Source: Rebecca billardiae RCC1528
Taxonomy: Eukaryota; Protista; Haptophyta
Assembly (NCBI GenBank): GCA_965240325.2
Contig: OZ251248.1
Span: 620,001-684,000, forward strand
Length of the DNA: 64,000 bases
Direction: 5' to 3'
Shown: in pieces, positions 16,151 through 38,947 of the stretch
Position numbering within the stretch: the stretch's first letter is position 1
Layout: each line of letters starts with the position of its first letter
The notes under the pieces: model-generated
Seen by the model: the letters and a program-made list of their open reading frames with translations, nothing else
Database searches by the model: none
What the model was told of the DNA's origin: nothing
Translations under genes and position numbers: made by a program

Positions 16151-19100
16151 ATGGCGATGGCCCTGGTCGGGATTGCCGTACTACTTCTCCCATCAAGCGC
16201 ACGTGTCACCACGCCCACATCGGCACGAAGCGCTGCACCGCTGCCGTTCCCAGTCTCTCCCTCGCCCGTATCCCCGCCGCCCGATGGCGATGGCGACGGC
16301 GACGCATCACTTCCATACTCGAGCGGAGGGCAGGGAAGAGACGATGGTGTGGTGAGCCAGACGAGCGACAATGGTGGCTTGCGTGGCACCTTTGTGAGAG
16401 GTGAGCACCCTCGCCAGTCAGCCGCTCGTCACGGGCGTATGCTGCATCTCGCAAACCTCGTGCCTACCGACACCAACTGCACGTGCATATCCGAGTGTTG
16501 GCAGTGTGGCTTCTTTGACGGGGCGCAGTGTCCGTGGGGCCGCAGCTGGTGCTACACTCAAGGCGACTTTGGGTATGCGCTGGTGGGCCATCCAGGAGGA
16601 TGTGGCATCACAGGCCAGATTGCCCAGATATGGTGGTGGGACCTATGCATTGAGCTGCCTGCCCGCGCGTTTGAGCCGCAGGGCGTGCTGGAGCGACTGG
16701 TTTACCCGTCTGCACACGACCTCATGAACAGCGGCGACATGGAGTACTACGCGCTAGCAGCCTCGCTGCCCTACTGCCTCAGTGGCATGGCTACCAATCC
16801 TACTGGCTGTCGCAGCGCTCTTCTGGCCTCAGAACCAGAGCATCACATCTTGACGGTGAGGGACTGGTCGTGCGGGGCGTGCGTGCGGATCAATCCAAAT
16901 GTGACCAGCGCAGTGAGCGGTTGTGCTTATTTCGTCGACCTTGCCATGGTGGCATATTACGACCCGGCCAAGCACACTGTTGTGCTTGCCTTCCAAGGGA
17001 CGAACTCGTTCGCCAACTCGTGGTGGGCCAATGTGGATTTGGCTGTGGGGTACCCATGGGCTCACCTGGGCAGCTCCTGGGGTTCAGTTGGGGTGCACAA
17101 TGGGTTCTACGAAGCATTCGAAGAGCTGCAAGGCGAGGTCTACGATGCGCTTGAGCAGATTCACGAGGAGGCATTGCAGTTTCACCACGAGCCAGCCGCT
17201 CTTGTTACTGTCGGTCACTCACTGGGTGGGGCAGTTGCTACTTTTGCAGCCTTTGATCTTGCAAGCCTGTGGGACGTGGGAGTTGCAGCACACTTTGCCA
17301 ACAGCACACCAGCATGTGATGGTGTGCTACCGTGTGCGCATGCCATGCCCTACACTGCCGACGGCACACGGCGCAGGCGTCCGTGGAATCTCCATCGCCC
17401 ATATGCAGTGACGTTTGGCCAGCCGAGAGTTGGCAACAGAGCTCTGGGAGTCAAGTATGCCATGCTGGTGACAGAGCATTACCGCTTCCTCAACCAGTAC
17501 GACTGGGTGGCAGACTATCCTAATCAACCATGGATGCACGTCCCTTCGACTGCTATCCACTTCCCTGCCGTGCGTGGTTCGCCTGAGGTCTTCAACAAGA
17601 CTGTCTGCACAGCTTTGGACTACTCAGTTTGTGTCTCGAAGGCAGGTGACGATGCTGACCCCCAAAACTGCACGACAAGCTCAGGAGCCACAGGAGTCGA
17701 TTGGTTATGGACATGGCGGTACGATGGGCATAGCAACTTCTGCGGGCTGGAGCACGAGATTGGAGACGAAGACACATATTGCACCAGTGCCTTCTCTCCC
17801 CCACCGCCAGCACGACCACCTGCTCCTGAGCCAAGGCGCCCACCTCCCTCCCCTCAGCCTGGGCTGCTGCCACTCCCACCAAGTCCACAGCCACCAGGCA
17901 TACCACCACACCAGCCGCCACCGGAGTCTGTGCCAACAGACCCCCCGCCTTCTGCACCACCAAGCGCTCTGCCTCTCTCTTCCCCAAGCTGGCCACCGAG
18001 CCCACCTCCACTTGCACCACCTATGCCACCGCAGCAGTCGTCAGCCCCCCACCAACCGCCGCATCCATCGCCAAGTCTGCCTCCAAGCCTGCCACCCAGC
18101 ATACAGCCGCTCTTGCCACCACTTTCTCCGCCGCCAATCTCGCCGCCGCCATCGCAACCGCCTGCGACGCATCCGCCAGACCAGCCGCAGCCACCACCTG
18201 CATCGCCGCCGCCACGCGCTCCAGCTGCCAGACCGCCGTCAGCACTACCACTCTCACCTCAGCCACCTTTGCCTCCGCCACTGTCGCCACCGCAACCGCC
18301 GCCGCGCCTCCCACCTGCCCCGCCGCCGAGCTCGCCGCCATCCCCCCTGCCCGCCAATCCACCGCACCCTCCACCCCATGCACCCCCAACGCCACCGTCG
18401 CCACCGCGCACTCAGCCGTTGCCGCCGCAGTGGCCACCAAGCGGGCCACCAAGATCACCGCCTGGCCTGCAGCCAAGCCTACCGCCAAGCCCACCGCTAT
18501 TTGCGCCCCCGCGCTCCCCACCACCGCTGTCGCCGCCATCGTTACCACCGGCTGCACCACCTGCAGTCCCACCCCTGCCACCAGCTGCATCGCCCCCACC
18601 CGACGCTCCACCGGCCCGCCCGCCGTGGGCACCACAGTTCTCACCTCAGCCCATGCTGCCGCCCTCGCAGCAGCCACTGTCTCCACCGCAACAGCCGTCG
18701 AGCCACCCACCTGTCTCGCCGCCGAGCTCGCCGCGATCGCCCCCACCCGCCAATCCGTCACATGTGCCACCCAGTGCACCGCCGCCACCGCCGCAGCCAC
18801 CGCTCACTGAGCAGTTTGCTCCGCAGCCACCCCCAAGTCATCAACCGCCAAGCTCATCCCCAAGCATGCCTCCGAACATGCCCCCGAACCCGCTGCCTTT
18901 CTCGTCACTACCGTCTCCAACAACCTCACATCATCCACCATCCTCTCCACCTGGAGCGCCCCCGTCAAGCCCGCAGCTGCCACCAACGCCCTTGTCTCAA
19001 AGCCCATCACCACCTCGCACTCCGCCGCATCAGCCGCCACAGCAGCCTTCTCCTTCGCCGATGCGGCCACCTGGCCCACCACCTACTCCGTCTCCGCAGC

Positions 19101-21289: not shown

Positions 21290-23480
21290 CAGTGACGAGT
21301 GTGACGACGATGACGACGCGACATGCATTCTTGCGCCTAAGATGAATAACGAGTGCTGGTCCGAGGCGGTGACGATGAGTCAGCGTCCGTGGCAGCAGCA
21401 CGACCGGACTCACACCACAACGATTGCCGGGTGGGCGGGTGGGCAGTTTTCGTGAATTCTCAAACGAAAGAACGAGTACCCACATAGACACACGAACTTA
21501 ACAGCCGTGCAAAACGCACGCAGATGCCCGTTCTTCGGCAAAGAAAGGGGAGCCGAGCGGTACAAGCCGTACAAGTGATGAAAGTACGTACTTCGTTGCG
21601 CAGGCGGCGCGGGATCGCGCGGGCCCGCGGCGAATTGGAAACACCGAAAGACGGGCAGAGGCCGCGAAGGCGGCCAAAAGTTGGGTTGTGGGCGATTGCG
21701 GGGCGAGCGGTCTTGCGACCGCTAACGTCGCATCGCACGGGGCGCGTGCGGCCGTGCAGCTGGGAAGTGGTCTGGAGCGCCATCAGAGACGTGAACTAAG
21801 AGTAGCCAGCGTCGCTCGCTGCTACCTTGCCGCCTCTGGTCAGTGCGCGCGCCCACGCTGCCAATCGGCGAGCAGCGGGCGCCGCCGATCGTGCTGCAGC
21901 CGTGTGAATGAGTGACACTGGACAGTCAACGAGGAGTGAGCGAGGGCTGCTGACGGTGTATAGCCCTACTCAGTTGCGCGCCATGCGGCCTCGAACGTCT
22001 GCGCAAGAGCTACAGCACGAGCCGTCGTAGCTTTTCAAAGCGTTCCGACTGGCGCAAGTCCATCCGTGGCCGAGCTCTCACGAGGAGCTGTAGGTGAGCG
22101 GGTTGCGAATACTGCCCTGAGCGCATCCCATGCGCACATCCTGCAACCAGCAATGCCGCATGAGCATGCAGACGTTTGAGGCATTATCCATCTGTGTCGC
22201 CGTCGCGTCGCGGGTGCGGCGGTTCCGCTGAAGGCTGTATGGCGCAGGCGGCCTCCTGGACGTGCGTGCTTGGACTGGTGGCGTACTTGTCGTGACTACG
22301 GGGGACAGCACATCGCGATTACATGTGTACATAGCCACGCCGAGCTGCACAGCGCGCCGCGCGTCCGCCCAGCAGTGCACCACGCTCTCATCTTGCGGCC
22401 CGCCGCCACACTGGGCCGCCGCTTTCCCGCGCGAGAGGCCAAGACTGTACCCAAGCGACGCTGGGTGACGGGGGGCACGGCGCAGTGGGACGCAACCAAT
22501 CAATCTGAGGCTGGCATGCCGCCTACACGGGCACGTCGGCAGCTACACCAGCGCGCACCGCGCAGGGCAGTGCCGCCCCCCCTCGCTCGTGAGGCTACCG
22601 CCGTGCGCCTGCCAGCCGCCCACCTTCGAGCCCCCCCGAAGCTCGGGGCTCGCGGTTTGCCCTGGCTTCGCGCAGTGGAGCGGGCAAAGCTTTGAGCCAG
22701 CTTGGAACTCCTAATCAAAGCGCTTGGCGGGAGCCTGAAAGAATTAACGTACTCCGATTACTTGGGGTACCCCAAGTAAGTTACTGGCTTAGAGTTCGGG
22801 TCTGAAATCCTGTTGTCGATTCTCACGAAAATTGCCTCCCTTCCCACCCGGCAATCGTTGTGGTGTCTGCTCCAATGACGGACCGACCGACTGCCTCGTC
22901 ATCAGCAGCAGTGACTCAATAAATATATATATATATAAACACGACGAATATATAGCAGTAATAATCAAAACTGCGCTTAACAGCAAATAATAACTACTTG
23001 CCACCTCGGCGGGCGGCGCGGGCGGGCGCGGCGCCGGCCGGCGCACCGTCAGCCCGCGCCCGTAGTGAGACGTGAGGCGCGCCGCCTAGGAGCAGTAGTC
23101 TCGTAGCTGTCCGGTAGCAGTCTCCGAGACGCATGCGCATCATCAGGATATGCTGTATACGCACTGAACACTCTCATCAGGCCGTGCGTCGAGGGCGGCA
23201 GTCAGCACCCAGCGGGAATCTGCTGGCCGTCGGCAGCCCGTCGATGGCGCAGCAGAGCAGCCGTGATGGGTGCAAGTCATGTATATATATTCGGCTTATT
23301 TGCGCCATATATGGCTGCGCGTGGAGAGCATAGCCGAGCAATAAGCAGGGGGTAGTATATATATATATGAGCAAGCAGTATAGACGTAGTTGCATGCAGC
23401 AGGCGGCGACAGCAGGCGTCGCGCGTCAGCCGCGTCACGCATCGTCACATACATATATCGTCGTCATATCAGATATATTA

Positions 23481-23481
<1 letters not shown>

Positions 23482-23516
<35 letters not shown>
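23482..23516. repeat. (TA)n microsatellite abutting an element start
   Basis: Read directly. Confidence 0.95.
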
Positions 23517-23519
<3 letters not shown>

Positions 23520-24553
23520 GTGTTATTGGCACAATAATCGATTGTGTCCGCTGGCGAGAAGTCCGTGGCCATACTACCCGCCGATCGACTTTGCCCTGCC
23601 CGCTGCGTCGTACTAAGCTTCAGGGCCACGATCCAATTGGCTATTATCGACCTCGACGCACCGTCGCCCGCTTGCTGCAGCCCCTTGCCTCGGCACCCCG
23701 CGCCTCCAGCTGAGCCGGCCTCGACCGCTGGTGAAGCGCGCTACACCTGCTCGACTACAGCACGGCAGATACAAACGATTCATCGTTCTGGCGGAGCAAC
23801 CACCACAAGCGCGCTCACCATTCCCGCCAAAATAAGCATCATACACGCCTCTATGATGCATCAATGACGACGAACTCGGTCGCCCAGCAATATTCCAGCT
23901 CATCGATTGGCTTTCTCATCTACAGCCGATCGATCATACATTGATGGGGGTACCTGGAGTACAAATGGCCGGCAGCGGTCGTATTCATCTTCTATGCTTA
24001 TTGGACGGTGACAAAGCTGCAGTATGCCAGCCGTGTCCGCTCATCAAGGAGGCTCATCCAAGTTACCGCAGATTCGATCTCGGTGACACGCGCACGCTGC
24101 TCGGGCAAGCCAGCTGCCAGATTCCCTCTCCCAAGCCCTCTGGCCAGCTGTCAGCTGCGTGCTCGGTTTCGCAGCAGCTGCCCTCGTGCCAAGTGCTCGC
24201 CCCTCCGCCTCCCCTATCTCCACCTCTTATTGCCGTCCTCTTACGGCGTGGCGCGACGAGGGATCTTACGGCGTGGCGCGACGACGATCTCGCGCTCCCG
24301 CCTGCTTTTGGTCGCTGCCCGTTGTGCCCCACTGCAGCCTGCGGTGGGCTGCAACGTATTCCACGACAACTACTAGAAAATCCCCTAGCTTTTGGTCGCT
24401 GCCCGTTGTGCCCCACTGCAGCCTGCGGTGGGCTGCAACTACGTACGTATTCCATCACGACAACTAGAAAATCCCAAGGAGTGTCTGTGTTATGTAAGTA
24501 TGCGCCTGCCGCATCCAGGCAGTAGTTGGTTGCGTACGCAAGCTAGGTCAAGG

Positions 24554-26599: not shown

Positions 26600-29500
26600 T
26601 TAGAGCAGCTCGTTACTGCCGCCAGAGGATGCGCCTCGGCGCGTACCTGGCAACGGCGCCACCGCGCCGACAGACATGGCCCGGCCCGCCGCGGAGGGGA
26701 ATGCCGGCGCGGGGGCTCCGGCGACGCCAGGCCGGCCGCCGTTGGCCGCGCCTTGCTGCTCGCCGCCCTCGGGATCCGACCGGCGCAGCCACTGCTCGAA
26801 CTCGACCTGGCTGCTGTTACGCCGCCGGGAGCGCGCCGCGGCGGCGGACATGGCGGACGTGCTACGGTTCGGCGCGGGCGGCGTCGGGCGCACCTCGCCG
26901 TCCGGGAGGGCGGCCGCCGCGTACGCCGGCGGCGGCTCGAGCACGATGGCCGCGTCGGCGCCGTCCGCCGCCGGCGGCTCGCCCGCCGGCGTGCCCTCCA
27001 GGGGCAGGTGCCCCTGGCTCGCCGTCAGCCGGCCGGCGGCGAGGTTGTGCATGGCGCCCGGCCCGGCGCCGGCCGCGTCCTCGGGCAGCGCGTTGGAGAG
27101 CAGCTGCGCGACCGCGAGCGAGGGCACCATCTGGATGGGCGGCGGCGAGAGCTCGTGCAGACGCTCGTCCCAAGACTCGTCGGCGATCGACATCACCGCG
27201 TACGGCCGGCGGTAGCGCGGCAGCTGCTCGAAGATGGCGTGGCACACGAGGTAGTTGGCCTCGTCGTACGGCGTGAAGATGAGCACAAAGTCGAGGGAGG
27301 GCAGCACGCGCATCGCGCGCTGCAGCCGGAGGAAGTCGATGTCGAACACGTCGAACGCGTCCGCGTCGGTGCGCCCGCCGACGCTGATGGCGCGGGGGCG
27401 CAGGCCGGCGGCGGGCGCACCCGCGAGCGCCGAGCTGCCCTCGGCTGTCGGGACCGTGTCGGGCGCGTCGCCCTGGTCCTCCTCGTCCGCGTCCGCGTGC
27501 GCGTGCGCGTCCGCGTGCGCGTGCAGGTTGCCCGTCGAGTGCAGGATCTGGCCGAGCGGGAAGCCGAGGTACACGCCGCCCTTGGCGGCGGGCGAGGCGG
27601 GCGGCACCCCCGCCTCGTGCCCAGTGCTGCGCCGCGGGCCCACGGCACCGGCGCCACCGGAGCGCGGCGAGTCGGGCAGGCTCAAGCGGTCCCGTGTGCG
27701 GCCGAACGACGAGCCTTCTTGGTCACTCGGCTCCATCGTCGGGCTGAACAGCGGCATCGAGATGCGCGCGCGGCGGCGCGACTGCGCGGGCGGCGCCGGG
27801 GCGGCGCCGGGCGGCCTGCGCAGCCCCGCCAGGTCGGTGACCACCACGTCCCACCCCGACTGCTGCAGGTGCGCGGCGATGTTCTTCACGGCCGGGTCGT
27901 CCCACGGCTCGACCACGACGAGCACGCCGCGCTCGCGCTTCTTCACGAGCATCGGCTGGATGGGCGACTTGATCGACTGCTCGGCGTCCTGCCCGGTGTG
28001 CGCCTCGTTGCACGCCTGCAAGCGGCGGCACCCGCACGCGGCGGCACCCGCGCGCGCGTGCGGCCGTCAGAGGCCACCCAGCGCGCCGCGAGTGCGCGCG
28101 CGCGGTGCGCGGCGCGCGCGGTGCGCTGCGCGCGCGCCCGGTGTGTGCCGCACCTTGATGGCGTACTTGAAGAGCGGCGGGCCGAGGAACTGGTTGAGCA
28201 CGACGGTGGCGACGATGGCGGTCGCAAAGCCGGGTCCCCACGAGAAGGACTTGGACACGTTCTGCGCCAGGCCGAGCGTCACGCCCGCCTGCGTCATGAA
28301 CGCCATCCACGCGTGGTTGGTGTGCTTGGTGGGCAGCTTGGAGAGCCGGCCGCCGATCTGCGTGCCGATCACGATGCCGGTCGTGCGCACGCACATGATG
28401 AGCAGACACACGGGCAGCATCTTGGGCACCGCGTCCAGCTCCATCTCCGCGCCCGTCAGCGTGAAGAAGGCGATGTACACGGGCGAGGACGCGTACTCCG
28501 CGAGGTGGTGGAACGTCTCGCGGTAGTTCGAGTAGTTCACCACGGCGAAGCCGGCCTGCGCGCGCGGGCGAGAGGGCGCCCGTGAGGGCGGGCGCGCGCG
28601 CGGTGCGGCGGGTGCGGCGGGTGCGGCGGGTGCGGCGCGCGCGCGCGTGCGCGTGCGCACCGTCATGCACACGATCATTGGCTGCATCACAGAGAAGCCG
28701 ATGTGCTCGGAGGAGAAGCCCTCGAGCCAGAACGTGCCGTAGCCGAGGATGAGGAAGAGCACCTTCTGCATCAGGCCGAGGAAGCTCGCCAGCCCGCGCC
28801 CCGCGCGCTTGCACAGGCTGCGGTGGCGCGGGCTGCCCCCCGAGGCCGGCACCGTCTCGGACGCGCCGCACGTCGGGATGCGCACGAGGCACAGGATGAG
28901 CACGTTGCCCAGCAGGAAGCCCATCACGATCGAGACGAGCATCTGCAGGCCGAAGATCATGAGCACGTCGCTCGTCTTGGCGTTCTCCGCCACCGCGCCC
29001 TCCTCGAGCCGGCGGCCCGCCTCCTGCGCCGCCGCCTCCGCGGCCGCGTTGAGCGAGGAGACGGCGAGCGAGGTGAGCGAGAAGAGCACGATCACCGTCA
29101 TGTCCATCACCACCGTGACGGCGAGCATCACGGTGGTGAACGGGCCCTTCGCGCCGAGCTCGGAGATGATCGCGATGGCGGACGACGGCGAGCGCGCGAC
29201 CGAGAGGCAGCCGATCAGCATCGCGACGCCGAGCCTCTGCGAGAAGACCATCCCCTGCATGAACGGGAACATGGACGAGAACGTGAGCACCGCCATGAAC
29301 GTGAGCGCGTACGTGACGGAGACGAGGCCGCAGATCACCGAGGCGACGGGGCGCACGAACTCCTTCAGCTCGTTGATGTAGAACTTGCCGCCGGCGGAGA
29401 AGCCGATGAAGCCGAGCGCCATCTGGCCGATGAAGCCGAGGTGGCTCGGCCCGTTGTACGGCACGAGCATCAGCATGTGCGGCCCGACCGCCATCCCGAC

Positions 29501-32500
29501 CAGGAGGTAGCCGGTGATGAGCGGCACGCCGAGGCGCGCGGTCGCCTTGCTGATGATCGCCGACGCGAGCGCGAGCACGGCGAACGCGCACGTGAGCATC
29601 ACGCCGTCCTTGAGCTTCTGCTGCTGCCCGCCCTCGAACTTGTACGGCGAGGAGGGCAGGAAGGCGTTGTGCGCGGGCGCCACCAGCACCTGCCCGCTCG
29701 CCGCGCTCTTGTTGTACGCGAAGGAGACGGAGGTGGGGCCCATGCGCCGCGCGACGAAGGTGAAGCCGAACGACGCGCGCGACTCGTCCGCCGGCTCGAG
29801 CGTCGCGGCGAGCGGGTCGCCCGACGAGTCGAGCGCGCGCACGGTGATGGCGCGCGCAAGCTCCTCCTGCGAGCCGAGCAGCCGCGCCACGTTGCCGTAC
29901 CGGTCGCGCGTGCTGACCGCGCAGCGCACGCGCTCGCCCTGCGTCACCGGGTTGGGCGCGCACGCGAGCGGCGAGTGGTCCATCGCCGCGCTCGCCGGCA
30001 GCACGTCGAGCGACTGCTCGAAGCGCACGTTGCGCTGCACCCAGTGCGAGCCTCGGAACGCGATCGCGATGCGCGCCTGCCCCGCGCGCTCAAAGTAGCC
30101 GTAGAAGCCGAACTCGTCGACGCCCTTGGCGTGGACCTGCGAGAAGTGCGCCGAGGGCTCGGCGATGGTCACTTCGAAGTCGCCCTTGCTCGCGCCGCCC
30201 GCGCGGTTGCCGAACGGCCCGCGCGTCACGATGCTGCACTGCGTGACCTCGCCCGCCGCCACCGGGTTTGGCGCGCACGAGAAGAGCGTCATGCTCGGCA
30301 TCAGCAGCCCGGGGAAGATGGCGATCGGGTGCGCGTGCACGTAGCGCGCCGAGCGGTCGGACGCGTTGAACTCGATCACGACCGACGCGATCCCCGTCTG
30401 CGCCGTGACGAACGTGAAGTTGAGCGGCGGCGGCGGCCCCGCGCCGCCGCCGCTCGCGTTGGCGCCGCCGCGCGCGGGGTGCTGCTCGGAGAGGCGCACG
30501 TCGATCACGCGCTTGTTCGCCTCGACGAGGTGGACGCGCACGGCGGGCGGGCGCGAGCGGACGGGGTTGCCGAAGTGGTCGCAGAACTGCACGGTGCACG
30601 ACGCCGGGTGCCCCGCCACCACGTGCCGCTGCCCGCAGTCCACGCGTGTGCTGTTCGGGTCGATGGGCGCGGGCAGCACCGAGATGGACGGCGCGCTGTC
30701 GGCCGCGAGCCCGGGCGCGGACGCGACGAGCCGGATGGGCGCGGCGACGAGCAGGCGCGCGTCGACGAAGCGCGCGAGGCCGTCGACCGCGGTCGCCGAG
30801 AGCGTGGACACGCCCTCGAACGTGTCCGAGTACGCCATCACGATCAGCGAGACCGTCACCGCCGACTCGCCGTCGATGTCGAGGTGGCGGCGGCCGTCCC
30901 GGTTGCGCACCTCGACCGTCACGTTGAACGGCTCGCCCGCGACCACGGCGCTCGGCCGCTCGGCGATGGCGAGCTCGGTGGGCGGCAGCACGAGCGCGCG
31001 CACCACCGCCGAGCCGTTCGTCTGCTCGCCGAACAGCGCCGCGCCCTCGCCCACCACCGTGTAGTTGAGCGCGAGCGCGCCGCCCGCGTACGCGGTGAGC
31101 ACGACCGAGCCACTCGCGGCCGCGGGCCCAAACCGCAGCACCGCGGGCTCGACGCGCAGCGCGGGGTCGCCGCCGAAGACGAGCTCGACGGGCTTGTCGA
31201 GCGTGCGCGGCGCGCGGATCGTGAGCGCCGCCGAGGGCACGCCCGCCGAGAGCACGCCCAGCGCCGCCGTGTCCGGCGCGCTGAACGCGAGCGGGCGGAC
31301 GGGCAGCGCGAGCGCGCGCGGCGGCGCGTAGTGCTGCGCGTCCTTGCCGCTCAGCTCAAACGAGACGGCGAGCAGCCCCGGCAGGAGCGGCTTGAGCTGC
31401 AGCACGTGCGCCTTCGACGCGGGCGCGTCGGGGGTGAACTCGACCAGCGGCGGCGTGAACTCCGCGCCCGCCGCCACCGGGCGCACGCTCAGCCCGGCGC
31501 TCGGCAGCCGGCTCACCTCGACGCGGATCGCGTTGGCGCGCGGCTCGAGCACGACGAGCGCGCCCGAGAGAAGCTGCGTCGCGACCACGCGCTCGACCGC
31601 GCGGATCTGCACGCGCGTGGGCGGCGGCGCGTCGAAGTGCGCGGCGTCCTCGCCCGAGTCGAGCGCGTCGATCGTGTAGTTCAGCTCGAACGCGCCCGCC
31701 GCCGAGCCGCGCACGCGCACGGGCGCGGAGAGCGTGGTCTCGTCGAAGGCGAGCGTCGTGGCCGAGAGCGCGACGTGCTCGGGCGCGGCCACGCGCACAC
31801 ACAGCCGCCCGTGCGGCGCGCTCTCGAGGCTGACGTCGAAGGTGCGCTCCTCGCCGATGTACTGCGCGCCCAGCTCCGCCGGCGCGCGCACCTTCTTCAG
31901 CGCGAGCACGCGCACGGGCACGGCGGAGGGCGCGTCGAAGAAGGCCGCGTCCGCGCCGCCCAGCGCGAGCTCGACGCTCGCGCTGCCCGCGCCGCCGCGC
32001 ACCGCGCGCGCGCGGAACGCGCCGACGGGCGGCGCGTCGGCGGCGTCGGCGGGCGGGTCGGCGGGGCCGAAGCGCCAGCTCGGCGGCTCGAAGCGCAGCC
32101 CCGCCGCGCGCGGCGCGACCAGCAGCTCGCGCAGCGGCGTGGCGGAGAGCGCGACGGAGAGGTTGAGCGCGCCGGTCTCATACACGACCAGCTCGGAGCT
32201 GGGGCCGTGCCACGCGACACCGCCGCGCTTGAGGATCGAGACGGCGACGGGCGGCGGCGCGGCGAAGTGGCGGGCGAGCGCGCCGGAGAGCGCGAAGGCG
32301 ATGCGCGACTGCCCCGCCGAGTAGCACGCCGCGCTCAGCCCGAGCTCCGCCGGCGCGCTCGTGTTGAACTCGAGGGCGGGCGGGTGGAAGCTCAGCCCCG
32401 CGCCCTGCGCGGACACGAGCACGTCCGCCTCGCGCGGCCCAGAGACGGCGACGCTGCCCGCGGCGCGGCGCAGCGCCTCGGGCGTGGTGCGCAGGCGCAC

Positions 32501-35500
32501 GCCGATGCGCTCGCCCAGGTAGTACGTCCGCCCCTCCGCCGCCGCCGCGGCGAACGCCGCGGCGCCGCCGTCGTCCGCGCCGCCGTCGTCCGCGCCGCCG
32601 CCGCCGGCGCCGCCGGCGCCGCCGGCGCCGCCGCGCTCGTCCGCGGCCGCGTCCGACGGCGCGCGCGCGAGCGCTCTCGCGCGCAGCGGCGCGCCGCCCT
32701 GCAGCGACACGTTGAACGCCTCGAGCGCCGAGTAGATCACGCGCACGTAGGGCACGGCGGAGAAGTGGCGGCTGTGGTCGCCGGAGGTGTCGATGTGCAC
32801 CGCGATCTCAGAGCCCAGCACCGCGTCCGCGTTCGCGCGCACCTCGAAGAGCGCGCTCGGGCCGTCGCGCGCGTCGGCGCCCTCGGGCTGCGAGAGCGGC
32901 GCGGACGGCGGGCTGAACGAGAGGCCGAGCGCGCGCGGGGTGAGGACGAGCTCGGAGCACATCTGCGCGGCGTCGGCGCACGCGGCGCTCGCCGTCGCGG
33001 CGAAGCTCGCCACGTCGCCCTCGTACAGCCGCACGGCCGCGGGCAGCAGCAATGACTCGCGCTGCCGCACGAGCACCACCTGCGCGGGCGGCGCCTGGAA
33101 GTGCAGCCAGTTGGCGTCGCCCACGTGCCACTGCACCGTGCACGAGCCCGCGTGCTCAAACGAGACGACGGACTCGACCTGCACGACCGACTGCGTGAAG
33201 ACGAGCGTGGCGGGCGCGAAGCTGAGGCACGACGCCGTCGGCGTGAGCGTCACGCGCGTGTACGGCGGCGCGGACACGCTGATCTGCAGGCTCGTGCTCT
33301 CGCCCACGTAGTGCGCGTCGATCGGGTGCTGGAGCAGAAAGTGCTCGGGCGGCCGGATGGTGATGTGCGACTGCACCGGCTCGATGAAGTGCGCGGCGTT
33401 CGCGCCGCCCACCTCGTACGTGACGGGGATCTCGCCCGTGACCGTGCCCTGCACGAAGAAGGTGTGCGAGTGCTCGTGCCCCGCGCGGAAGCGGATGATC
33501 GACGGGCTGAAGAGCAGGCCCGTGCCCGAGGCGCGCAGCGTCACGTCCTGGTCGAGGTGCTTGGTCACCGAGATGGTGAGCGCGGCGATGTCGCCCACGT
33601 ACAGGTCGGGGTACGAGGCGAGGATGGAGAAGGTCTCGAGCTCGATCACCTGCACCTGGCCCACGTCGCGCGCCGGCACACTCACGTGCCGCGCCGCCGA
33701 GCCCTCCGCGCTGAGCCACAGCCGGACGGGCGAGGCGCTCGACGACGCGCCGCGCGTCTGCACGGCGAACGCGCCGCCCGGCGCTGCGGCGCGCAGCTCG
33801 ACGGACGCGGGCGAGACGAGCGCGCCGCCCGACGCGTGCAGCTCGACGCGGAGGTACTCGTCCGGCAGCACCAGCGGCACGCTCACGTTCACGAGCACCA
33901 CGTCGCCCACGTACACCACCGACGCCGACTGCGTGACGGCGAGCTGCTCGGCGGGCGCGAAGACGAGCGACAGCGGCGGCGGCGGCCGGTAGTAGCCCGC
34001 GCTCGGCCCGCTGAGGGCGAACTCGAGCTGCAGCGTGCACGGCGTGGCGGAGGAGATGTTGAGGCGCACGGGCGCGGCGCTGTCCACGTCAAAGACGACC
34101 GCCTCCGACGGCTCGATGCTCGCCGCGCACCCCTGCCCGCGCAGCACCGCGCTCGCCACCAGCCAGCCGTGCGAGCGCAGCGTGGCCGCGTGCGCGGGCC
34201 ACAGGCTCACCGCCGCCACGTCGCCGCGGTAGACGACGCTGCTGTTGTGCTCGGCGCCGACGGGGCGGACGAGGAGTGGCCGCATCGGCTTCACGACGAC
34301 CGTCAGGTTGGGCGGCGCCGCGTACATCGGCGCCGCGCGGTCGTCGACGAGCACCTCCCACCCGACGCTCACCGGCGCGTCGATGGCGGCGGGCGCGCGC
34401 ACGCGCAGCGCCGCGACGAGCGGACCGTCGTCGGCGGCGGCACCGTCCGCGTGCGCGTCGGCGGCGCCGCCCGCCGTCGGCGGCGGCGCGGGCTCGAAGC
34501 GCGCGAGCGGCGGCTCGAAGGTGAGGCCGGGCGAGTGGACCGGGCGCACGACCACCGTGCGCAGCGGCGCGCGCGAGATGCTCACGTTGAGCCACTTCGC
34601 CTCCGAGTACTCGCGGATCGTGAGCTCGCCGCCCGGCGCCGCCGCCCAGCGCGTGACGCGGATGGCCCCGCGCGCGCGCACCGACGCTCCGAGCACGCGC
34701 GGCGGCTCAAAGGCGAGGCGCTGGGCGTCGCTCTCGAGCGCGAAGCTGATGGTCGCCTCGCCGGGCTGCACCGCGCGCAGCACCACGCTCGTCGCGCGCC
34801 GGTCGCCCGACGTCCACGCCAGGTGGTCCGGGAGCGTCCGGACCGCGGGCGAGGAGGGCGTGAGCCGCAGCCCCAGCTGCTGCCGCTCGGCGAGCGCGCG
34901 CTGCGGCGCGTGCTCGACCAGCACGTCAAAGCGCGCCTCCTCGCCCACGTACAGCGGGGGCAGCGCGGCGGGGGAGATGGTGAACGAGCCCTGCTCAATC
35001 ACCGCGAGCGACATGTTCCGCGGCGGCACCATCCACCCCACCGCCTCGGGCCCCGCGTGTGCGGGCGCGGGCGCGAGCGGCCTGATGCGGAACGAGAGTG
35101 TGTAGTCGCCCGCCACGCCGCCGACCGCCGAGACGGCGAGCGCGCCGCTCGCGCCGCGCGCGAAGAGGAGCTCGGGCGGGTCGAAGCGCAGCGCGCTGGG
35201 CGTGTCGTCCGCGCCGTACAGCACGCGCTGCGCCGAGGGCACCAGCCGCACGCTCACCATCGGCGGCTCCGTGGGCTGCACCGTGAGCGCGCACACCTCG
35301 CCCGCGTACGGCACCGCGGCCGGCAGCGACACGCGGAACGACGGCCGCGGCGCCACGACGAGCTCGAGCGGCGGGGAGGGCGCGCGGTGCGCGGCAGCGG
35401 CGTACGGGCGCGCGACGACGACGACCAGCCCCGGCTCGCTCGCCGTGAGCTCGAACGACGCGCTCGCGTTCGGCGCGCCCGGCGTGGGCGGCGCCATGTG

Positions 35501-36410
35501 CGCGGCCGCGGGCGCGACGGTCACGCTGCCCTCCGCCTCCGAGCGGCGGCCGCCGCCGCCGACCGCGCTCTGGTCGATGGCCTCGACGGAGACGCCGAGC
35601 GCGTCGGCGTCGCCCTCGTCGGCGCTGACCATCGCCGTGCTCACCACCACGGTCCGCGTGTCGCCCACGAAGAACGGCCGCGCCGGCTGCGCGGGCGCGA
35701 CGCGCGCGCGCAGCTGCAGCCGCGCGCGCACGGCCAGCGGCAGCGCGGCGCCGCCCGAGTACGCGGCCGCCAGCCGGCCCTCGACGCTCGCGCGCACGGC
35801 GGTCTCGCCGCCGGGCGCGTCCTCGCGCACGGCGACGGTGAACCAGCCGACGCACCCGCCGTCACCGTCGGCGCTCCGCGCGAGCTCGCTCACGCTCGAC
35901 GACGCGACGCGCAGCCGCGCGCCGTCGGCGGGCTCGAGGCGCACGGAGACGGCGCCGCAGCCGCCGGCGTCGTCCGGCGGCGACGGGACGCGCGCCGAGA
36001 GCGCGACCGTCTCGCCCGGCCAGACGGCGGCGCGCGAGCAGTTGAGCTCGAGCGGCTCGCGCTCGAGCACGCGCACCGCCACGTCGGGCAGCGCGACGAA
36101 GTGCGGCGAGTCCGCGCCCGCCGTGTAGAAGCGCAGCGTCGCGTTGCCCGCGCGCTGCGCCGTCACCGTGAGCGACGCGCGCGTGCCGCCCGCGGCCGTG
36201 AACCGCACGCGCGGCGGCGCAAGGCTGAGGTTCGCGGCGACGGGGATGAGCACGACCTCGTCGTCGGGCGCGCGCGGGATCGAGACGTTGAACGCCACGC
36301 TCTCGCCCACGTACAGCGCGCGCGCCGGCGCGGGCGGCTGCAGCGCGAACCGCTGCAGCGGGTGCACCGACACGTTGAACGACACGCGCGAGGGCGGCGC
36401 GCGCGCGCCG

Positions 36411-36465
<55 letters not shown>

Positions 36466-37096
36466 GCGCGCTCGGCTCGAAGGCGAAGTGGGCGGCGTCG
36501 TCGCCGCTCAGCTGGAGCGCGAGCTCCACCGCGCCCGCGTGCAGCCCGTCCACCGTGATCGAGCCGCTCGCGCCCGAGCTCGGCATGAAGACGAGCGTGG
36601 GCGGGCGGATGCGCGCGGTTGCCGCGTCGAGCGCCGGCGTCACGATCAGCATCGCCGAGGGCGCGTGCGAGAGCGTGACGCTGAGGTGCACCTCGTCGCC
36701 CTCGTACACGACCGGGCCGGGCGACAGCGCCACGGCCACGCGGCCGATGGGCAGCACGAGTGGCAGCCGCGCGCCGTCCGCCCACGCGTTGCCGTCGATC
36801 GTCAGCATCGGCCGCGGCGCCGCCACCGTCGGCACGCGCGCGCGCGCGGTGAAGAGGTGCGGCCCGGCGGCGACGCTCGCGGCGTCGGCGCGCGCGATCG
36901 CAATCGACGGCTCGAACGCGTAGCCGTCCGCCGCCGGCTCGATCACCCGCGCCGTGCCGTTGCAGCCGACCGCGAGCTGCACGGTCTCGCCCACGTACGC
37001 CACGGCACCCCACGGCGGCGACGCGGGGAGGATCTCGCACGGCGGGCGGGCGGCGACGGCACCGGCCGCCACGAGGAGCGGGCCCAGCAGCCACAT
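26600..37096 (-). CDS. Giant (~3400 aa) protein: signal peptide, ~2500-aa beta-sandwich repeat ectodomain, CPA-family cation/H+ antiporter domain, RCK/TrkA-N-like tail; 3 exons
   Basis: Exons 37096-28661, 28555-28154, 28015-26600. Signal-like MWLLGPLLVAAGAVAA; recurring Y(V/E)G(E/D)...F.P..L.F units; three filamin-like units ending DHFGNP, GPFGNR and DRYGNV; antiporter motifs LGVPLITGYLLVGMAVGP, ALGFIGFSAGGKF, ARSPSSAIAIISELGAKGPFT, VTVVMD, YIAFFTLTGAEM, TQAGVTLGLA, LNQFLGPPLFK. Confidence 0.85.
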
Positions 37097-37513
37097 GCCC
37101 GGCGGTGCGTGGAGCGCGCGAGCGTCGCGCGGCGTGCGAGCCTCGGGACGCGGCGGGCGCGAGTCCGCCGGCACGGGCGGCGGAGGATGCGCGGGGGAAA
37201 GCTGCACAGGCTCCGCCGCCGCGACGATGATGATGTCGGCCTCGGATCATCACAGTGTGATCCCTCGCCCAGCCTGCGAGGCCCGCTGATGTCCAGCAGT
37301 GTGGGCAAAGGGAAAAACAAGCGGCGCGCCGGCACTCGGCAGGCGCATGGAGCGCAGAGCGCTGCCGGAACTTTCGTCATCATCAGCACACAAGCAAAGT
37401 CCTTTTGGCAGCTGGTGGCGAGCGCGCAGGAAGAAAGCTCGTCGCGTGCCTGGCCACGGCCACGGTCGTTTCATGGCGGGCCAAGACACTGCGCCTTGAA
37501 CGACGCAGGCACC

Positions 37514-38947
37514 ATGTCGCGCACGCCGGCGCACGACGGCGCGCAGCGGCAGCAGATCATGTACCGCCACATGGCGCAGCACCAGGAGATCGCCAAGCTC
37601 GTCGCCTTCGCGCACCTGCGCGGCGAGCTGCCGGCGGTCGGCCCGCTGCTCGTGAAGCGCCCTGACTACCGCGCGGAGAACGAGCGTGCGCTCGCGCGCG
37701 CGGAGGACGAGGAGCGACGCATGTCGATGCTGCGCTCGAAGAGCTCGCGTGGCGAAGGCGCGCCCAAGCCGCCCAAGCCCGCGCCGCGCGCCGCGGCCGC
37801 CGACGCGAGCGCGCCGAGCGCGAGGCCGCGCCGGCACGGCGGCGGCGGCGGCGGCTCGTCCGCCGCGCGCGAGCGCGTGCGCGTGCGGCTGCGGCGCGAG
37901 GGCGCGGTCGCAGCGGCGACCGCTCGGGCGGAGGCCGCACCCGCCGGCCCGGTGCTGCACGTGCGCCGCCTGCGCCCGTACTCCACGCTGCACGTGCTCC
38001 CCGCGTCGGTCGGCCGGCCCGAGCCCGTGCGCGTGCAGCCTCCGGCGCGCGTGGGCGCCGAGGGCGGCGCGCCCGTGGCGCTCGACGCGCGCGCGCGGCG
38101 CGAGCCGCCGGGCGCGCCGCCGACGCGCGTCGTCTTCGGCACGGCCGTGGCCGAGCGCCCGATCGAGCGCTCGCAGCAGTGGTCGCGCGGGCGCACGCAG
38201 TTCTGGGAGACGGGCGAGGGCGTGCCCGAGCTGCCTGCGGACGAAGTGTCGCGCGCGCACGCCACCACGCGCCAGCGCACGGACACGGGCACCAACTTCC
38301 CGGCGCCGGGCGTGCCGCTCTGGCCGCCCTCGCCGCGGCGGGCGGTGGGCGAGCACCTCGGACCCGGCGCGTACGCCAAGCCGTACGGCGACCGCGTGCG
38401 CGACCCGTGGACGCTGCCCGTCGACGAGCGGCTGCGGCCGTCTTCCGCGTTCGTCGCGCGCGAGAGCGTGCGACTCTGGTCGGACACACACGCCGGCTCG
38501 GACGAGCTGGGGGCGCACGCGCGCGTCGGGCCGGACGGCGTGCTCGTGGAGCCGAGGCCGGCGAGCGACGCGGGCTACGCGCGGTACACGCTCGCGCAGA
38601 TCGTGCGCGCGCGCACGCCGCCGCGTAGCCTGCTCGCGCATGGCGACGCGAGCAGCATCGCCCGGCCGACGTTCGTGCAGCAGCAGCGCGCCGCGCAGGA
38701 GCTGGCGCGCAGACGCAGCGAGCAGGTCGAGGCGCGCCTCGCGGCGGACCCGGCCAACGACTCTGCCACGGTCGCGACGCATGGCAGCGCAGCGTCGCCG
38801 CGCATCCGGCCCGAGACCCTCCTCATGCTCGGCGGCGTGCCCCCGGGTGGCCTCCGCGGCAGTGTGACGACGGACAGCCTCACGGCCGTGTCGAGCAGGC
38901 TGCTCGGCGCGGGCGGCGCGGCCGCCCCCAACGGCGCCGTCTCGTAG
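37514..38947 (+). CDS. Hypothetical protein (one GPGAY motif, possibly axonemal)
   Basis: Coding-like 3' part of the 33101-38947 ORF starting at ACCATGT. LGPGAY resembles PGPGxY repeats of ciliary microtubule-binding proteins (weak). Confidence 0.6.
   Translation: MSRTPAHDGAQRQQIMYRHMAQHQEIAKLVAFAHLRGELPAVGPLLVKRPDYRAENERALARAEDEERRMSMLRSKSSRGEGAPKPPKPAPRAAAADASAPSARPRRHGGGGGGSSAARERVRVRLRREGAVAAATARAEAAPAGPVLHVRRLRPYSTLHVLPASVGRPEPVRVQPPARVGAEGGAPVALDARARREPPGAPPTRVVFGTAVAERPIERSQQWSRGRTQFWETGEGVPELPADEVSRAHATTRQRTDTGTNFPAPGVPLWPPSPRRAVGEHLGPGAYAKPYGDRVRDPWTLPVDERLRPSSAFVARESVRLWSDTHAGSDELGAHARVGPDGVLVEPRPASDAGYARYTLAQIVRARTPPRSLLAHGDASSIARPTFVQQQRAAQELARRRSEQVEARLAADPANDSATVATHGSAASPRIRPETLLMLGGVPPGGLRGSVTTDSLTAVSSRLLGAGGAAAPNGAVS

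What the first reader, a model, noticed from the sequence alone, without database searches (positions are those of the whole stretch)
26600..37096. Giant Ig-repeat ectodomain fused in frame to a cation/proton antiporter: a candidate tethered sensor-transporter
Seen: one uninterrupted reading frame runs from a signal peptide through about 18-19 ~100-aa beta-rich repeats (starting YVGE/YEGD/YRGD, often ending (L/S)G.DA.HF..P) and three filamin-like units straight into a multi-TM CPA (Na+/H+ exchanger, Kef-like) domain, then a cytosolic RCK-like tail. Established: characterised CPA antiporters have no adhesin-sized ectodomain; such ectodomains typify polycystin-1 and adhesion GPCRs. Inference: a contact-, flow- or tension-gated K+(Na+)/H+ exchanger, or a transporter anchored to the cell covering or an appendage to control local pH. 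This is the best candidate for an undescribed system in the window.
Basis: partly seen in the sequence, partly recalled or inferred. Interest (0 to 1): 0.88.

Follow-up and report, generated by a model that had tools for sequence, protein, structure and literature searches.

The report
Giant Ig-repeat stalk fused to antiporter
A haptophyte alga encodes one roughly 3,400-residue membrane protein that joins a long, probably sugar-coated rod of 22 immunoglobulin-like domains to a cation/proton exchanger, a combination that my literature searches did not find described.

Summary
On the minus strand, one gene (37096 to 26600) encodes a signal-peptide-like start, 18 related ~100-residue beta-sandwich repeats, 4 filamin/Big_1-like Ig units, a conserved 15-residue linker, a 13-helix CPA-fold transporter and a degenerate RCK-like tail.

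Two corrections apply. A 105-nt in-frame intron lies inside the transporter. The tail is reached only by splicing a second, 138-nt intron past a stop codon. The spliced product is 3,417 aa.

The fusion is real. The full architecture is colinear in two other pavlovophyte sequences: a 57% GC genome, where one 2,581-codon ORF crosses the junction, and a 68% GC sequencing-run contig. A shorter form (4 Ig units + transporter + tail) occurs in Prymnesium parvum and in metagenomes.

The essential Asp (NapA D157 / KefC D156) is present. The second site residue is Met and the TM-Lys position is Thr, as in the roughly 1,400 bacterial relatives recovered.

Most likely this is an electroneutral K+(Na+)/H+ exchanger carrying an N-glycosylated adhesin-like stalk. 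Gating by contact or tension remains untested. It is a new variant of a known kind, and I found no description of it in the literature.

The parts
37097..37207 (-). In-frame codons upstream of Met38; probably 5' UTR, not coding
   Evidence: No codon periodicity (GC1/2/3 = 0.92/0.73/0.81) against GC3 0.98 downstream. Homologues align only from aa 44 onwards.
37028..37096 (-). Start codon (37096-37094) and signal-peptide-like hydrophobic N-terminus (aa 38-60)
   Evidence: Translation. P0001 starts with a similar hydrophobic segment. No signal-peptide predictor was available.
30977..37024 (-). Stalk of 18 Ig-like beta-sandwich repeats (R1-R18, ~100 aa each), N-glycosylation sequons enriched
   Evidence: Iterated HMM, 18 hits at E 1e-8 to 1e-30. 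AF2 model of R11: pLDDT 87.6, seven strands. Foldseek returns only Ig-like sandwiches. 25 of 39 Asn lie in N-x-S/T sequons against 4.5 expected.
36413..36463 (-). (GGC)17 poly-Gly tract in the R2-R3 linker
   Evidence: It lies in a short insertion with no counterpart in P0001, judged by eye.
33326..33628 (-). Repeat 11, by far the most conserved stalk domain; candidate binding module
   Evidence: 75% and 70% identity to the two pavlovophyte orthologues, against 26-51% for the other repeats and 58% for the TM domain. Its composition is atypical.
29693..30976 (-). Four membrane-proximal Ig-like units F1-F4 (filamin / Big_1 / FUS1-GEX2-like)
   Evidence: Pfam Filamin 6e-5, below the gathering score, and Ig_GEX2_N 0.007. 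PDB FUS1p 9qs0 at E 1.6e-4. The five-sequence profile hits the bacterial Ig-like protein 4e9l at 7e-6. Homologous units occur in Prymnesium P0300 and in P0306.
29627..29671 (-). Conserved juxtamembrane linker HNAFLPSSPYKFEGG
   Evidence: 62-69% identity across pavlovophytes over the wider aa 2506-2535 segment, and the LLP.SPY core is kept in the prymnesiophyte forms.
28661..29626 (-). CPA-fold transporter, exon-1 part (TM-1 to the start of TM8)
   Evidence: About 1,400 homologues, bacterial ones at 1e-73 carrying PF00999. Family profile hits NapA at 4.6e-7. NCBIfam CPA2 at 9e-7. AF2 pLDDT 85.7, and Foldseek top hits are all CPA structures.
29180..29200 (-). VARSPSS: break of the first discontinuous helix, with a family-invariant Arg
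   Evidence: Invariant columns in alignments A1 and A2. Aligned to the NapA TM4 break. The helix is broken at this point in the model.
29102..29104 (-). Codon of Asp2702 (VTVVMD), the conserved ion-binding Asp
   Evidence: Invariant column D183. Aligned to NapA D157, with the preceding Met aligned to NapA D156. The equivalence NapA D157 = KefC D156 is from PMC11150392.
28556..28660 (-). Intron 1 (105 nt, in frame, GTGCGC...GCGCAG)
   Evidence: A 35-residue insertion absent from all homologues. pLDDT below 50. No codon periodicity. It carries a tandem 9-mer. The position is shared with L001, L002 and P0299.
28154..28555 (-). Exon 2: rest of the transporter (TM8-TM12), including the TQAG break and IGTQIGG
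   Evidence: GC3 is 0.98.
28016..28153 (-). Intron 2 (138 nt, AAG|gtgcgg...ttgcag|GCG); contains the stop codon of the long ORF
   Evidence: DNA. No codon periodicity. It carries tandem 16-mers. The splice restores FKYAIKACNEAH, matching FKYAI..GEAH in homologues.
26603..28015 (-). Exon 3: cytosolic tail of 471 aa. It holds a split, degenerate RCK/TrkA_N-like domain (halves at 27833-27931 and about 27086-27331) around a low-complexity insert, and ends in ELL
   Evidence: Alignment with the TrkA_N region of bacterial relatives and with algal homologues. No Pfam hit of its own. GC3 is 0.945.
26600..26602 (-). Stop codon

Best explanation
This is a single three-exon gene of a pavlovophyte-like haptophyte encoding a 3,417-aa type-I-like polytopic glycoprotein.

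Shown here:
- A signal-peptide-like start.
- A rod of 18 + 4 Ig-like beta-sandwich domains, exposed to the secretory lumen or the cell exterior.
- A conserved short linker running directly into helix TM-1 of a 13-helix CPA (NhaA/NapA-fold) transporter.
- A cytosolic, degenerate RCK-like domain.

Inferred:
- The membrane part is an active elevator-type, probably dimeric monovalent cation/H+ exchanger. It uses the single conserved Asp2702. Because it lacks the second carboxylate and the TM-Lys of electrogenic CPA2s, it probably exchanges 1:1 electroneutrally.
- K+ is the more likely substrate, because the bacterial sister proteins carry TrkA_N/TrkA_C and PtsN-like EIIA regulatory domains.
- The ectodomain would be roughly 80-100 nm long if fully extended. 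This is my estimate from typical Ig-domain dimensions. It most likely works as an adhesin or anchor that places or retains the exchanger at a particular surface structure or contact partner, with repeat 11 as the specific binding module.
- Any direct control of transport by the stalk is possible but unproven.

History: the haptophyte-wide form has 4 Ig units. Pavlovophytes have 18 further repeats, of a type that is widespread in giant surface proteins.
For: One gene:
- Continuous ORF with GC3 0.98-0.99 across the junction.
- Colinear orthologues in Pavlovales sp. CCMP2436 (single 2,581-codon ORF in 57% GC DNA) and in a sequencing-run contig (2,896-aa ORF).
- The Prymnesium parvum gene model P0300 and metagenomic P0306 hold Ig units, transporter and tail in one protein.

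Exposure of the stalk: a 5.5-fold excess of N-x-S/T sequons in the ectodomain only, seen in two species.

CPA identity:
- Homologues at 1e-73 carrying PF00999, TrkA_N and TrkA_C.
- Profile hits to NapA and KefC.
- NCBIfam CPA2 and K+/H+ antiporter hits on the window sequence itself.
- AF2 pLDDT 85.7, with Foldseek hits exclusively to CPA structures at target-normalised TM-score 0.67-0.76 for the prokaryotic CPA chains.

Active-transporter constraint: all 19 family-invariant residues are retained, by construction of A2.

Ion site: Asp = NapA D157, Met = NapA D156, Thr = NapA K305. Their roles are taken from PMC11150392.

RCK-like tail.

Link to K+: EIIA/PtsN-like fusions in bacterial relatives and PtsN control of the K+/H+ antiporter YcgO (PMC11808508, PMC7349511).

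Repeat fold. Repeat 11 conservation.
Against: - There is no transcript, protein, localisation or transport evidence.
- Pfam PF00999 does not hit the window sequence itself, and phmmer against PDB finds nothing.
- The ion site is non-canonical (Met-Asp, no TM-Lys, Arg in the helix break), so substrate and stoichiometry are guesses. No member of this CPA subfamily was found to be characterised.
- The Thr = K305 equivalence rests on the low-confidence end of one profile alignment.
- The RCK-like tail lacks a glycine-rich nucleotide motif and TrkA_C.
- Nothing shows what the stalk binds.
- The signal peptide was judged by eye.
Confidence: 0.6

Rival explanations
1. Sensor-transporter: the stalk transmits contact, shear or tension, or ligand binding at repeat 11, to the exchanger. 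Ion/H+ exchange would then be switched by what the cell touches.
For: - The stalk is joined to TM-1 by a short, highly conserved linker (62-69% identity).
- One repeat is more conserved than the transporter itself.
- The architecture is kept across Haptophyta.
- CPAs are known to be fused to sensor modules: SLC9C1, with a voltage sensor and a cyclic-nucleotide domain, was among the fold hits (PMC10620092 listed).
Against: - No GPS/GAIN, PKD or REJ or other known mechanosensory module was found.
- From my own knowledge of CPA structures, TM-1 belongs to the static dimerisation scaffold, so the coupling path is not obvious.
- There are no functional data of any kind.
Confidence: 0.15
2. Endomembrane exchanger: the protein sits in Golgi-derived, scale-forming or vacuolar membranes. 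The Ig rod would face the lumen, for example binding scale or matrix material, while the exchanger sets luminal pH or K+.
For: - The topology evidence (signal peptide, sequon excess) cannot tell lumen from cell surface.
- A C-terminal Leu-Leu or Met-Leu ending is conserved among algal homologues and could be a sorting signal.
Against: - Nothing specific supports it.
- From my own knowledge, a ~100 nm rod is awkward in small vesicles, and giant Ig-repeat proteins are typically surface proteins.
Confidence: 0.15
3. Adhesin with a dead transporter: the CPA domain serves only as a multi-pass anchor or dimerisation module and no longer transports.
For: - The second ion-site residue is Met and the TM-Lys position is Thr.
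- Pfam PF00999 misses the sequence.
Against: - The same Met-Asp and Ser/Thr features are the family consensus in the ~1,400 bacterial relatives recovered. Those have no stalk but carry RCK and EIIA regulatory domains, so the features are typical of the subfamily and not a sign of decay.
- All family-invariant residues are kept.
- The TM domain is 58% identical between pavlovophytes, above the stalk average.
Confidence: 0.08
4. Artefact: two neighbouring genes (a secreted repeat protein and a CPA transporter) are read as one only because stop codons are rare in 72-78% GC DNA.
For: Very long spurious ORFs do occur in this window, namely the antisense ORFs of 1450 and 1948 codons.
Against: - The junction is open in a 57% GC genome over 7.7 kb.
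- Only about 25 residues, conserved, separate the last Ig unit from TM-1. That leaves no room for a UTR or promoter and offers no start codon.
- Codon periodicity is unbroken across the junction.
- The same join is seen in Prymnesium and in metagenomes.
Confidence: 0.03

Closest known systems
Bacterial CPA2-type 'cation:proton antiporter' proteins with C-terminal TrkA_N + TrkA_C (+/- PTS EIIA), e.g. P0003, P0006, P0025 (uncharacterised subfamily)
   Same: - Transporter domain 33-37% identical over more than 90% of its length.
- The invariant motifs VARSPSSAIAI..E, V.MD and TQAGV.LGLA are shared.
- An RCK-like domain follows the last helix.
   Different: - The bacterial proteins have no N-terminal extension.
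- The window protein has a 2,500-aa ectodomain, an extra TM6-TM7 loop, a split RCK-N with a disordered insert, and no TrkA_C or EIIA.
- The eukaryote-like and bacterial sequences fall on opposite sides of one fully supported branch. The 'eukaryote' label for the unnamed sequences is my assumption.
KefC / plant KEA K+/H+ exchangers (PDB 8BXG)
   Same: - 13-helix CPA fold with a C-terminal RCK domain.
- The conserved Asp is present.
- There is no second carboxylate, so exchange is probably electroneutral.
   Different: - KefC has a Gln-Asp motif and K307; here these are Met-Asp and Thr.
- No glutathione-site evidence.
- Sequence relation is only at profile level (E 2e-5).
- No ectodomain in KefC.
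NapA (Thermus thermophilus Na+/H+ antiporter, PDB 4BWZ/5BZ2)
   Same: Best sequence-profile match among solved structures (4.6e-7). Same helix order, and from my own knowledge an N-out, C-in topology that suits an external stalk.
   Different: NapA has the Asp-Asp motif with K305 (electrogenic) and has neither a stalk nor an RCK domain.
SLC9C1, the sperm Na+/H+ exchanger fused to a voltage sensor and cyclic-nucleotide domain
   Same: It is a precedent for a CPA core fused to sensory modules, and it is a fold match.
   Different: Its sensor modules are membrane-embedded or cytosolic and C-terminal, not an extracellular Ig rod. It belongs to the CPA1 lineage.
FUS1 / GEX2 gamete-adhesion proteins and bacterial invasin/intimin-type (Big_1) Ig arrays
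   Same: The four membrane-proximal units give weak matches to FUS1p, to Filamin/Ig_GEX2_N and to the E. coli Ig-like protein 4e9l.
   Different: All matches are below family thresholds. Those proteins are single-pass or outer-membrane adhesins without a transporter.
Polycystin-1 and adhesion GPCRs
   Same: A giant repeat ectodomain on a polytopic membrane protein. This is an analogy only.
   Different: No PKD, REJ or GPS/GAIN domains were detected, the membrane part has a different fold, and there is no evidence of autoproteolysis.

Membership tests
CPA superfamily (Pfam PF00999 Na_H_Exchanger; NhaA/NapA fold) | 13-helix fold with two discontinuous, crossing helices | tested here: met
   AF2 model pLDDT 85.7, pTM 0.84, with breaks at VARSPSS and TQAG. 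The Foldseek top 50 are all CPA structures at probability 1.00; target-normalised TM-score is 0.67-0.76 for the prokaryotic CPA chains PaNhaP, MjNhaP1 and 5bz2.
CPA superfamily (Pfam PF00999 Na_H_Exchanger; NhaA/NapA fold) | Score above the Pfam gathering threshold for PF00999 | tested here: not met
   No PF00999 hit for the window sequence even at E<=10. 17 of 21 aligned homologues do hit it, best 1e-27. NCBIfam TIGR00932 (CPA2) hits the window at 9.4e-7 but with 28.6 bits against a cut-off of 238.
CPA superfamily (Pfam PF00999 Na_H_Exchanger; NhaA/NapA fold) | Strictly conserved ion-binding Asp (NapA D157 / KefC D156) | tested here: met
   Asp2702 is an invariant column and aligns with NapA D157. 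Its role is taken from PMC11150392.
CPA superfamily (Pfam PF00999 Na_H_Exchanger; NhaA/NapA fold) | Cation/H+ exchange activity | not testable with these tools
   Needs reconstitution or complementation.
Electrogenic CPA2 (NapA/NhaA type) | Asp-Asp motif plus a TM Lys that salt-bridges to it | tested here: not met
   Met aligns with NapA D156 and Thr with NapA K305. The K305 column lies near the end of the alignment and is less certain.
Kef/KEA K+/H+ exchangers | Gln-Asp motif and K307-type Lys; glutathione-gated RCK domain | tested here: not met
   The motif is Met-Asp. The tail aligns with TrkA_N of the relatives, but there is no glycine-rich loop in the aligned first half and no Pfam TrkA_N hit. 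The glutathione site was not examined.
RCK / KTN (Pfam TrkA_N, TrkA_C) | Rossmann-like TrkA_N domain followed by TrkA_C | tested here: inconclusive
   Both halves of TrkA_N align with bacterial relatives that do hit PF02254. They are split by about 165 low-complexity residues. The window tail has no Pfam hit, and TrkA_C is absent.
Filamin / Big_1-type Ig-like repeats | Pfam Filamin (PF00630) above the gathering score | tested here: inconclusive
   24.2 bits against 26.9. PDB FUS1p at 1.6e-4. The profile hits the Ig-like protein 4e9l at 7e-6.
Ig-like beta-sandwich (the 18 stalk repeats) | Seven-strand sandwich fold | tested here: met
   AF2 pLDDT 87.6, seven strands. Foldseek hits are PapD/ASH/MSP, macroglobulin and cystinosin N-domain sandwiches, query-normalised TM-score 0.54-0.69 among the hits with E <= 0.001. 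No Pfam or PDB sequence family fits. The profile finds 4,092 proteins, some of which match Pfam fn3_6.
Polycystin-1 / adhesion-GPCR type receptors | GPS/GAIN autoproteolysis module, PKD or REJ domains | tested here: not met
   No such Pfam hit at E<=10 on any piece of the protein.

The most novel reading that the evidence does not exclude
Haptophytes possess a class of receptor-transporters in which an adhesin-like Ig rod, with a conserved ligand-binding domain at repeat 11, directly gates a K+/H+ exchanger. Cell contact, surface-layer attachment or mechanical load would then be converted into a local pH or K+ signal. This coupling principle is not known for any secondary transporter.
Probability: 0.15. 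Interest if true: 0.88.

Novelty: new variant of a known kind. Interest (0 to 1): 0.64.

Why it matters
From my own knowledge, CPA exchangers are among the best-studied secondary transporters, and all characterised ones are regulated from the cytosol or within the membrane. A lineage-wide family that places a 450- to 2,500-residue, probably glycosylated Ig rod on the outside of the transporter would be a new way of positioning or controlling ion/H+ exchange. It could bear on surface pH and K+ homeostasis in haptophytes, an ecologically major algal group.

It also shows three other things:
- A large, unnamed Ig-like repeat family (over 4,000 giant proteins) exists outside Pfam.
- A bacterial CPA subfamily with a Met-Asp ion site, of which about 1,400 members were recovered, appears uncharacterised.
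- Current annotation splits or misses such genes. The CCMP2436 locus is annotated as a 302-aa model, about 7 kb of nothing, and a partial 486-aa model.

Tried and rejected
- Pfam on the whole ORF and on five pieces gave no Na_H_Exchanger, TrkA, PKD, GPS or fn3 hit, only sub-threshold Filamin.
- phmmer of the TM piece against PDB found nothing. Profiles were needed.
- The repeat profile against PDB and Pfam gave only chance-level Ig-like hits.
- The FUS1 link did not strengthen with a five-sequence profile (E 0.22), so I do not claim GEX2/FUS1 membership.
- A His cluster in repeat 11 (HEHSH) looked like a pH or metal sensor, but it is not conserved in CCMP2436. I dropped the idea.
- The (CGCACG)n stretch in the tail was checked as a possible third intron, but it contains no GT...AG.
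- The first metagenome scan with the junction found nothing. The second only re-found the P0306 gene. No spliced cDNA-type contig was found, so there is no transcript evidence.
- None of the top 150 repeat-family proteins carries the CPA domain.
- Literature searches for a CPA with an Ig-like or large extracellular domain returned nothing. The one paper returned for CPA2 in haptophytes I did not read.
- The organism could not be fixed. No near-identical protein exists in the protein collection. A Diacronema-like GC content (73.25%, PMC8379373) is only suggestive.
Full report
**What is there**

The window is 58-83% GC. On the minus strand, an ORF of 3,046 codons runs from 37207 to 28067 without a stop.

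In DNA this GC-rich, ORF length means little. The antisense strand carries ORFs of 1,450 and 1,948 codons. Three independent lines show that the minus-strand frame is coding:
- Codon-position GC is strongly periodic. GC3 is 0.98-0.99 against GC2 of 0.44-0.57, from Met38 (37096) through the repeats, the Ig units and the membrane domain. The periodicity vanishes in the 111 nt upstream and in two short segments described below.
- The translation is colinear with a 2,896-aa protein from a sequencing-run contig. P0001 aligns at residues 44-2851 against 13-2873, with 41.6% identity.
- It is also colinear with Pavlovales sp. CCMP2436 scaffold MU631712.1. That DNA is only 57% GC, and a single 2,581-codon ORF covers the stalk-to-transporter junction.

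**Gene model**

Every one of 39 aligned homologues lacks the 35 residues VRTRT...PRAQ. The corresponding DNA (28660..28556) starts GTGCGC and ends GCGCAG and is 105 nt long. It has no codon periodicity, holds a tandem 9-mer and is modelled at pLDDT below 50. It is an in-frame intron. The gene callers that produced P0001 and P0299 ran into stops at exactly this position.

The long ORF then ends at 28067. A donor AAG|gtgcgg at 28154/28153 and an acceptor ttgcag|GCG at 28016/28015 join it to the ORF 26600..28021. This splice restores ...FKYAIK-ACNEAH..., matching FKYAI..GEAH in the algal and bacterial relatives.

The exons are 37096..28661, 28555..28154 and 28015..26603, giving 3,417 aa.

**The stalk**

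An iterated HMM seeded on one unit finds 18 significant copies between aa 70 and 2070. P0001 has the same 18 copies in the same order. No other frame or place in the window has any.

The repeats are only 16-28% identical to repeat 11, the reference copy of the alignment. They match no Pfam family and no solved structure by sequence.

With the 36 copies as alignment, AlphaFold gives a confident seven-strand sandwich (pLDDT 87.6). Its structural neighbours are all Ig-like sandwiches: PapD/ASH/MSP domains, macroglobulin domains and the cystinosin N-domain, at E around 3e-4.

The repeat profile finds 4,092 proteins (319 at E<=1e-30) among 1.84 billion representatives. The 150 best are mostly giant proteins, up to 7,900 aa with up to 61 matched copies. 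Of four top hits scanned, two show sub-threshold matches to Pfam fn3_6 and two have no Pfam match. None of the top 150 has the transporter. The repeat is therefore a common but unnamed surface-protein module.

Four further Ig-like units (aa 2078-2505) follow. Three of them have the C..P.P..AG....C....RD.FGN pattern. They give only sub-threshold or weak hits:
- Filamin at 24.2 against 26.9 bits, and Ig_GEX2_N.
- The Chlamydomonas gamete adhesin FUS1p, E 1.6e-4.
- A bacterial Ig-like adhesin, 4e9l, E 7e-6 with a profile.

I call these filamin/Big_1-like and do not assign a family.

**Topology**

In the ectodomain, 25 of 39 Asn sit in N-x-S/T sequons, against 4.5 expected (p = 9e-15). In P0001 the figure is 23 of 43, against 5.8 expected. 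The membrane domain shows no excess.

This argues that the stalk passes through the secretory pathway. It also fits a 13-helix CPA with the N-terminus outside and the C-terminus inside, as in NapA and KefC (my own knowledge).

**The transporter**

Pfam does not see it, and phmmer against PDB finds nothing. Even so:
- The piece finds 1,435 proteins. The best bacterial ones score 1e-73 at 33-37% identity over more than 90% of the length. They are annotated cation:proton antiporter and carry PF00999 + TrkA_N + TrkA_C, often with PTS_EIIA_2.
- 17 of 21 aligned members hit PF00999.
- Family profiles hit KefC at 2e-5 and NapA at 4.6e-7.
- NCBIfam CPA2 and 'potassium/proton antiporter' models hit the window sequence directly at about 1e-6, far below their cut-offs.
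- The AlphaFold model (pLDDT 85.7, pTM 0.84) has 13 helices with two broken helices at VARSPSS and TQAG.
- The 50 best Foldseek matches listed are all CPA transporters: PaNhaP, SOS1, MjNhaP1, NapA, NHA2, SLC9C1, KefC and NHE1.

So the CPA fold is established, while membership of any named subfamily is not.

**Ion site**

In the NapA alignment, the Asp of VTVVMD (Asp2702, codon 29104-29102) is NapA D157. According to the KefC structure paper, that residue is the strictly conserved, essential ion-binding Asp, equivalent to KefC D156.

The preceding residue is Asp in electrogenic exchangers, Asn in electroneutral Na+/H+ exchangers and Gln in K+/H+ exchangers. Here it is Met.

The position of NapA K305 / KefC K307 is Thr here, and Ser or Thr in the family. 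That column lies near the alignment end and is less certain.

These features are the consensus of the whole bacterial subfamily. That subfamily also has an invariant Arg in the first helix break. They therefore describe an unstudied CPA type rather than a decayed copy.

One carboxylate and no proton-carrying Lys suggest electroneutral exchange. This is an inference from the logic in PMC11150392. The RCK and PtsN-like EIIA domains of the bacterial relatives point to K+. PtsN is known to control the K+/H+ antiporter YcgO (PMC11808508, PMC7349511). This is also an inference.

**The tail**

Exon 3 aligns in two blocks with the TrkA_N part of the bacterial relatives and with algal homologues. The blocks are RGVLVVVEPWDDPAVKNIAAHLQQSGWDVVVTD and LDFVLIFTPYDEANYLVCHAIF...PSLAVAQLL. 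About 165 low-complexity residues separate them.

There is no glycine-rich loop in the aligned first half, no TrkA_C and no Pfam hit. 'RCK-like' is fair; a functional nucleotide sensor is doubtful.

**Distribution and history**

A search restricted to long proteins found only P0001. An intermediate length range revealed three more:
- P0299, a pavlovophyte-like fragment with 3 repeats, 4 Ig units and the transporter.
- Prymnesium parvum AB1Y20_019827 (P0300, 1,415 aa).
- A metagenomic protein, P0306 (1,615 aa).

The last two have the 4 Ig units, the same transporter and the same kind of tail, but no 18-repeat stalk. In Prymnesium, a neighbouring gene model lies 156 bp upstream, and tblastn finds no match to the window's stalk repeats anywhere in the locus.

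Other algal-type homologues (P0126, P0129) have only a short Cys-rich N-terminal segment.

In a tree of transporter domains, the 14 eukaryote-type sequences form one side of a fully supported branch against 25 bacterial ones. The groups within it are pavlovophytes, Prymnesium with P0306, and the short forms. The 'eukaryote' label for the unnamed sequences is my assumption.

The simplest reading is that an algal branch of this CPA subfamily acquired extracellular extensions of growing size, with the 18 repeats present only in the pavlovophyte forms.

**Clues to function**

Conservation between the three pavlovophyte genes is uneven:
- Most repeats are 26-51% identical.
- The Ig units are 39-58% identical.
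- The transporter is 58% identical.
- The juxtamembrane linker segment is 62-69% identical.
- Repeat 11 is 70-75% identical and has an atypical composition (Ala 8 and Ile 9, where the other repeats have about 20 and 2).

A single, very conserved domain in mid-stalk looks like a specific binding module.

The most likely working model is an adhesin- or anchor-bearing exchanger. The stalk places the transporter at a defined partner or surface layer, or in a luminal matrix. The core exchanges K+ (or Na+) for H+, and the tail provides cytosolic regulation.

It remains possible but has no support beyond the tight, conserved link to TM-1. No GPS/GAIN, PKD or REJ module is present.

**Novelty**

Searches of 8 million papers for CPA transporters with Ig-like or large extracellular domains gave nothing. 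The search for CPA2 in haptophytes returned one paper, which I did not read.

The Prymnesium and CCMP2436 proteins are in public databases only as hypothetical proteins. The CCMP2436 gene is split into two models with about 7 kb left unannotated.

All the parts are of known kinds, and the combination is what is new. I rate it a new variant of a known kind, with interest 0.64. It would be higher if the stalk proved to control transport.

**Not established**

These remain open: transcript structure, localisation, glycosylation, substrate, stoichiometry, dimerisation, what the stalk binds, and the source organism. The source is pavlovophyte-like by best hits, and its GC content resembles the 73.25% of Diacronema lutheri (PMC8379373).

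Noticed in passing
window 33326-33628 (-): Repeat 11 of the stalk is 70-75% identical between three pavlovophyte genes, more than the transporter (58%). It is poor in Ala and rich in Ile and His, unlike its 17 siblings.
   Followed up: partly
window 36413-36463 (-): A perfect (GGC)17 tract encodes 17 glycines in the R2-R3 linker. It lies in a short insertion with no counterpart in P0001, judged by eye.
   Followed up: partly
window 28016-28153 and 28556-28660 (-): Both introns are 85-89% GC and built largely of short tandem repeats, with period 16 and period 9 respectively.
   Followed up: partly
window 28703-33055 (+) and 33101-38947 (+): ORFs of 1,450 and 1,948 codons lie antisense to the gene. 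They are Arg/Ala/Gly-rich by-products of GC3 near 1.0 on the coding strand. The last ~450 codons of the second ORF, beyond about 37600, look like a real, divergently transcribed neighbouring gene.
   Followed up: no
L001 (Pavlovales sp. CCMP2436, MU631712.1) 2113-11574: The orthologue is annotated as a 302-aa protein plus a partial 486-aa protein, with about 7 kb left unannotated between them. The locus holds 409 N in total, and the tblastn match breaks between 3141 and 3749, which is probably where they lie. The real ORF 3671-11416 spans stalk and transporter.
   Followed up: yes
P0006, P0025 and many other bacterial relatives: About half of the bacterial relatives listed fuse a PTS EIIA (PtsN-like) domain behind TrkA_N/TrkA_C. 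This is a fused version of the PtsN-YcgO regulation of K+/H+ antiport known from E. coli. The subfamily has a Met-Asp ion site and an invariant Arg in the helix break, and appears uncharacterised.
   Followed up: partly
window 26603-26611 (-); P0126, P0129, L002 C-termini: The protein ends in ...ELL. Algal homologues end in ELL, LL or ML, which may be a C-terminal sorting signal.
   Followed up: no
P0126 residues ~120-145; P0129 residues ~8-27: Algal homologues without Ig domains have a short conserved Cys-rich N-terminal segment (C....G.L.CW.TGC...C) before TM-1. An extracellular N-terminal add-on therefore seems general in the eukaryotic branch.
   Followed up: no
window 16001-24000: GC falls to 0.58-0.64 at 16-18 kb and 20-24 kb, and GC skew reaches -0.28 at 18-20 kb, unlike the rest of the window.
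   Followed up: no
P0149-P0298 (representative library): The stalk repeat belongs to a very large, Pfam-unnamed family. 4,092 proteins match it, and the 150 best are mostly giant proteins of up to 7,900 aa with up to 61 matched copies. Some give only summed weak matches to fn3_6.
   Followed up: partly
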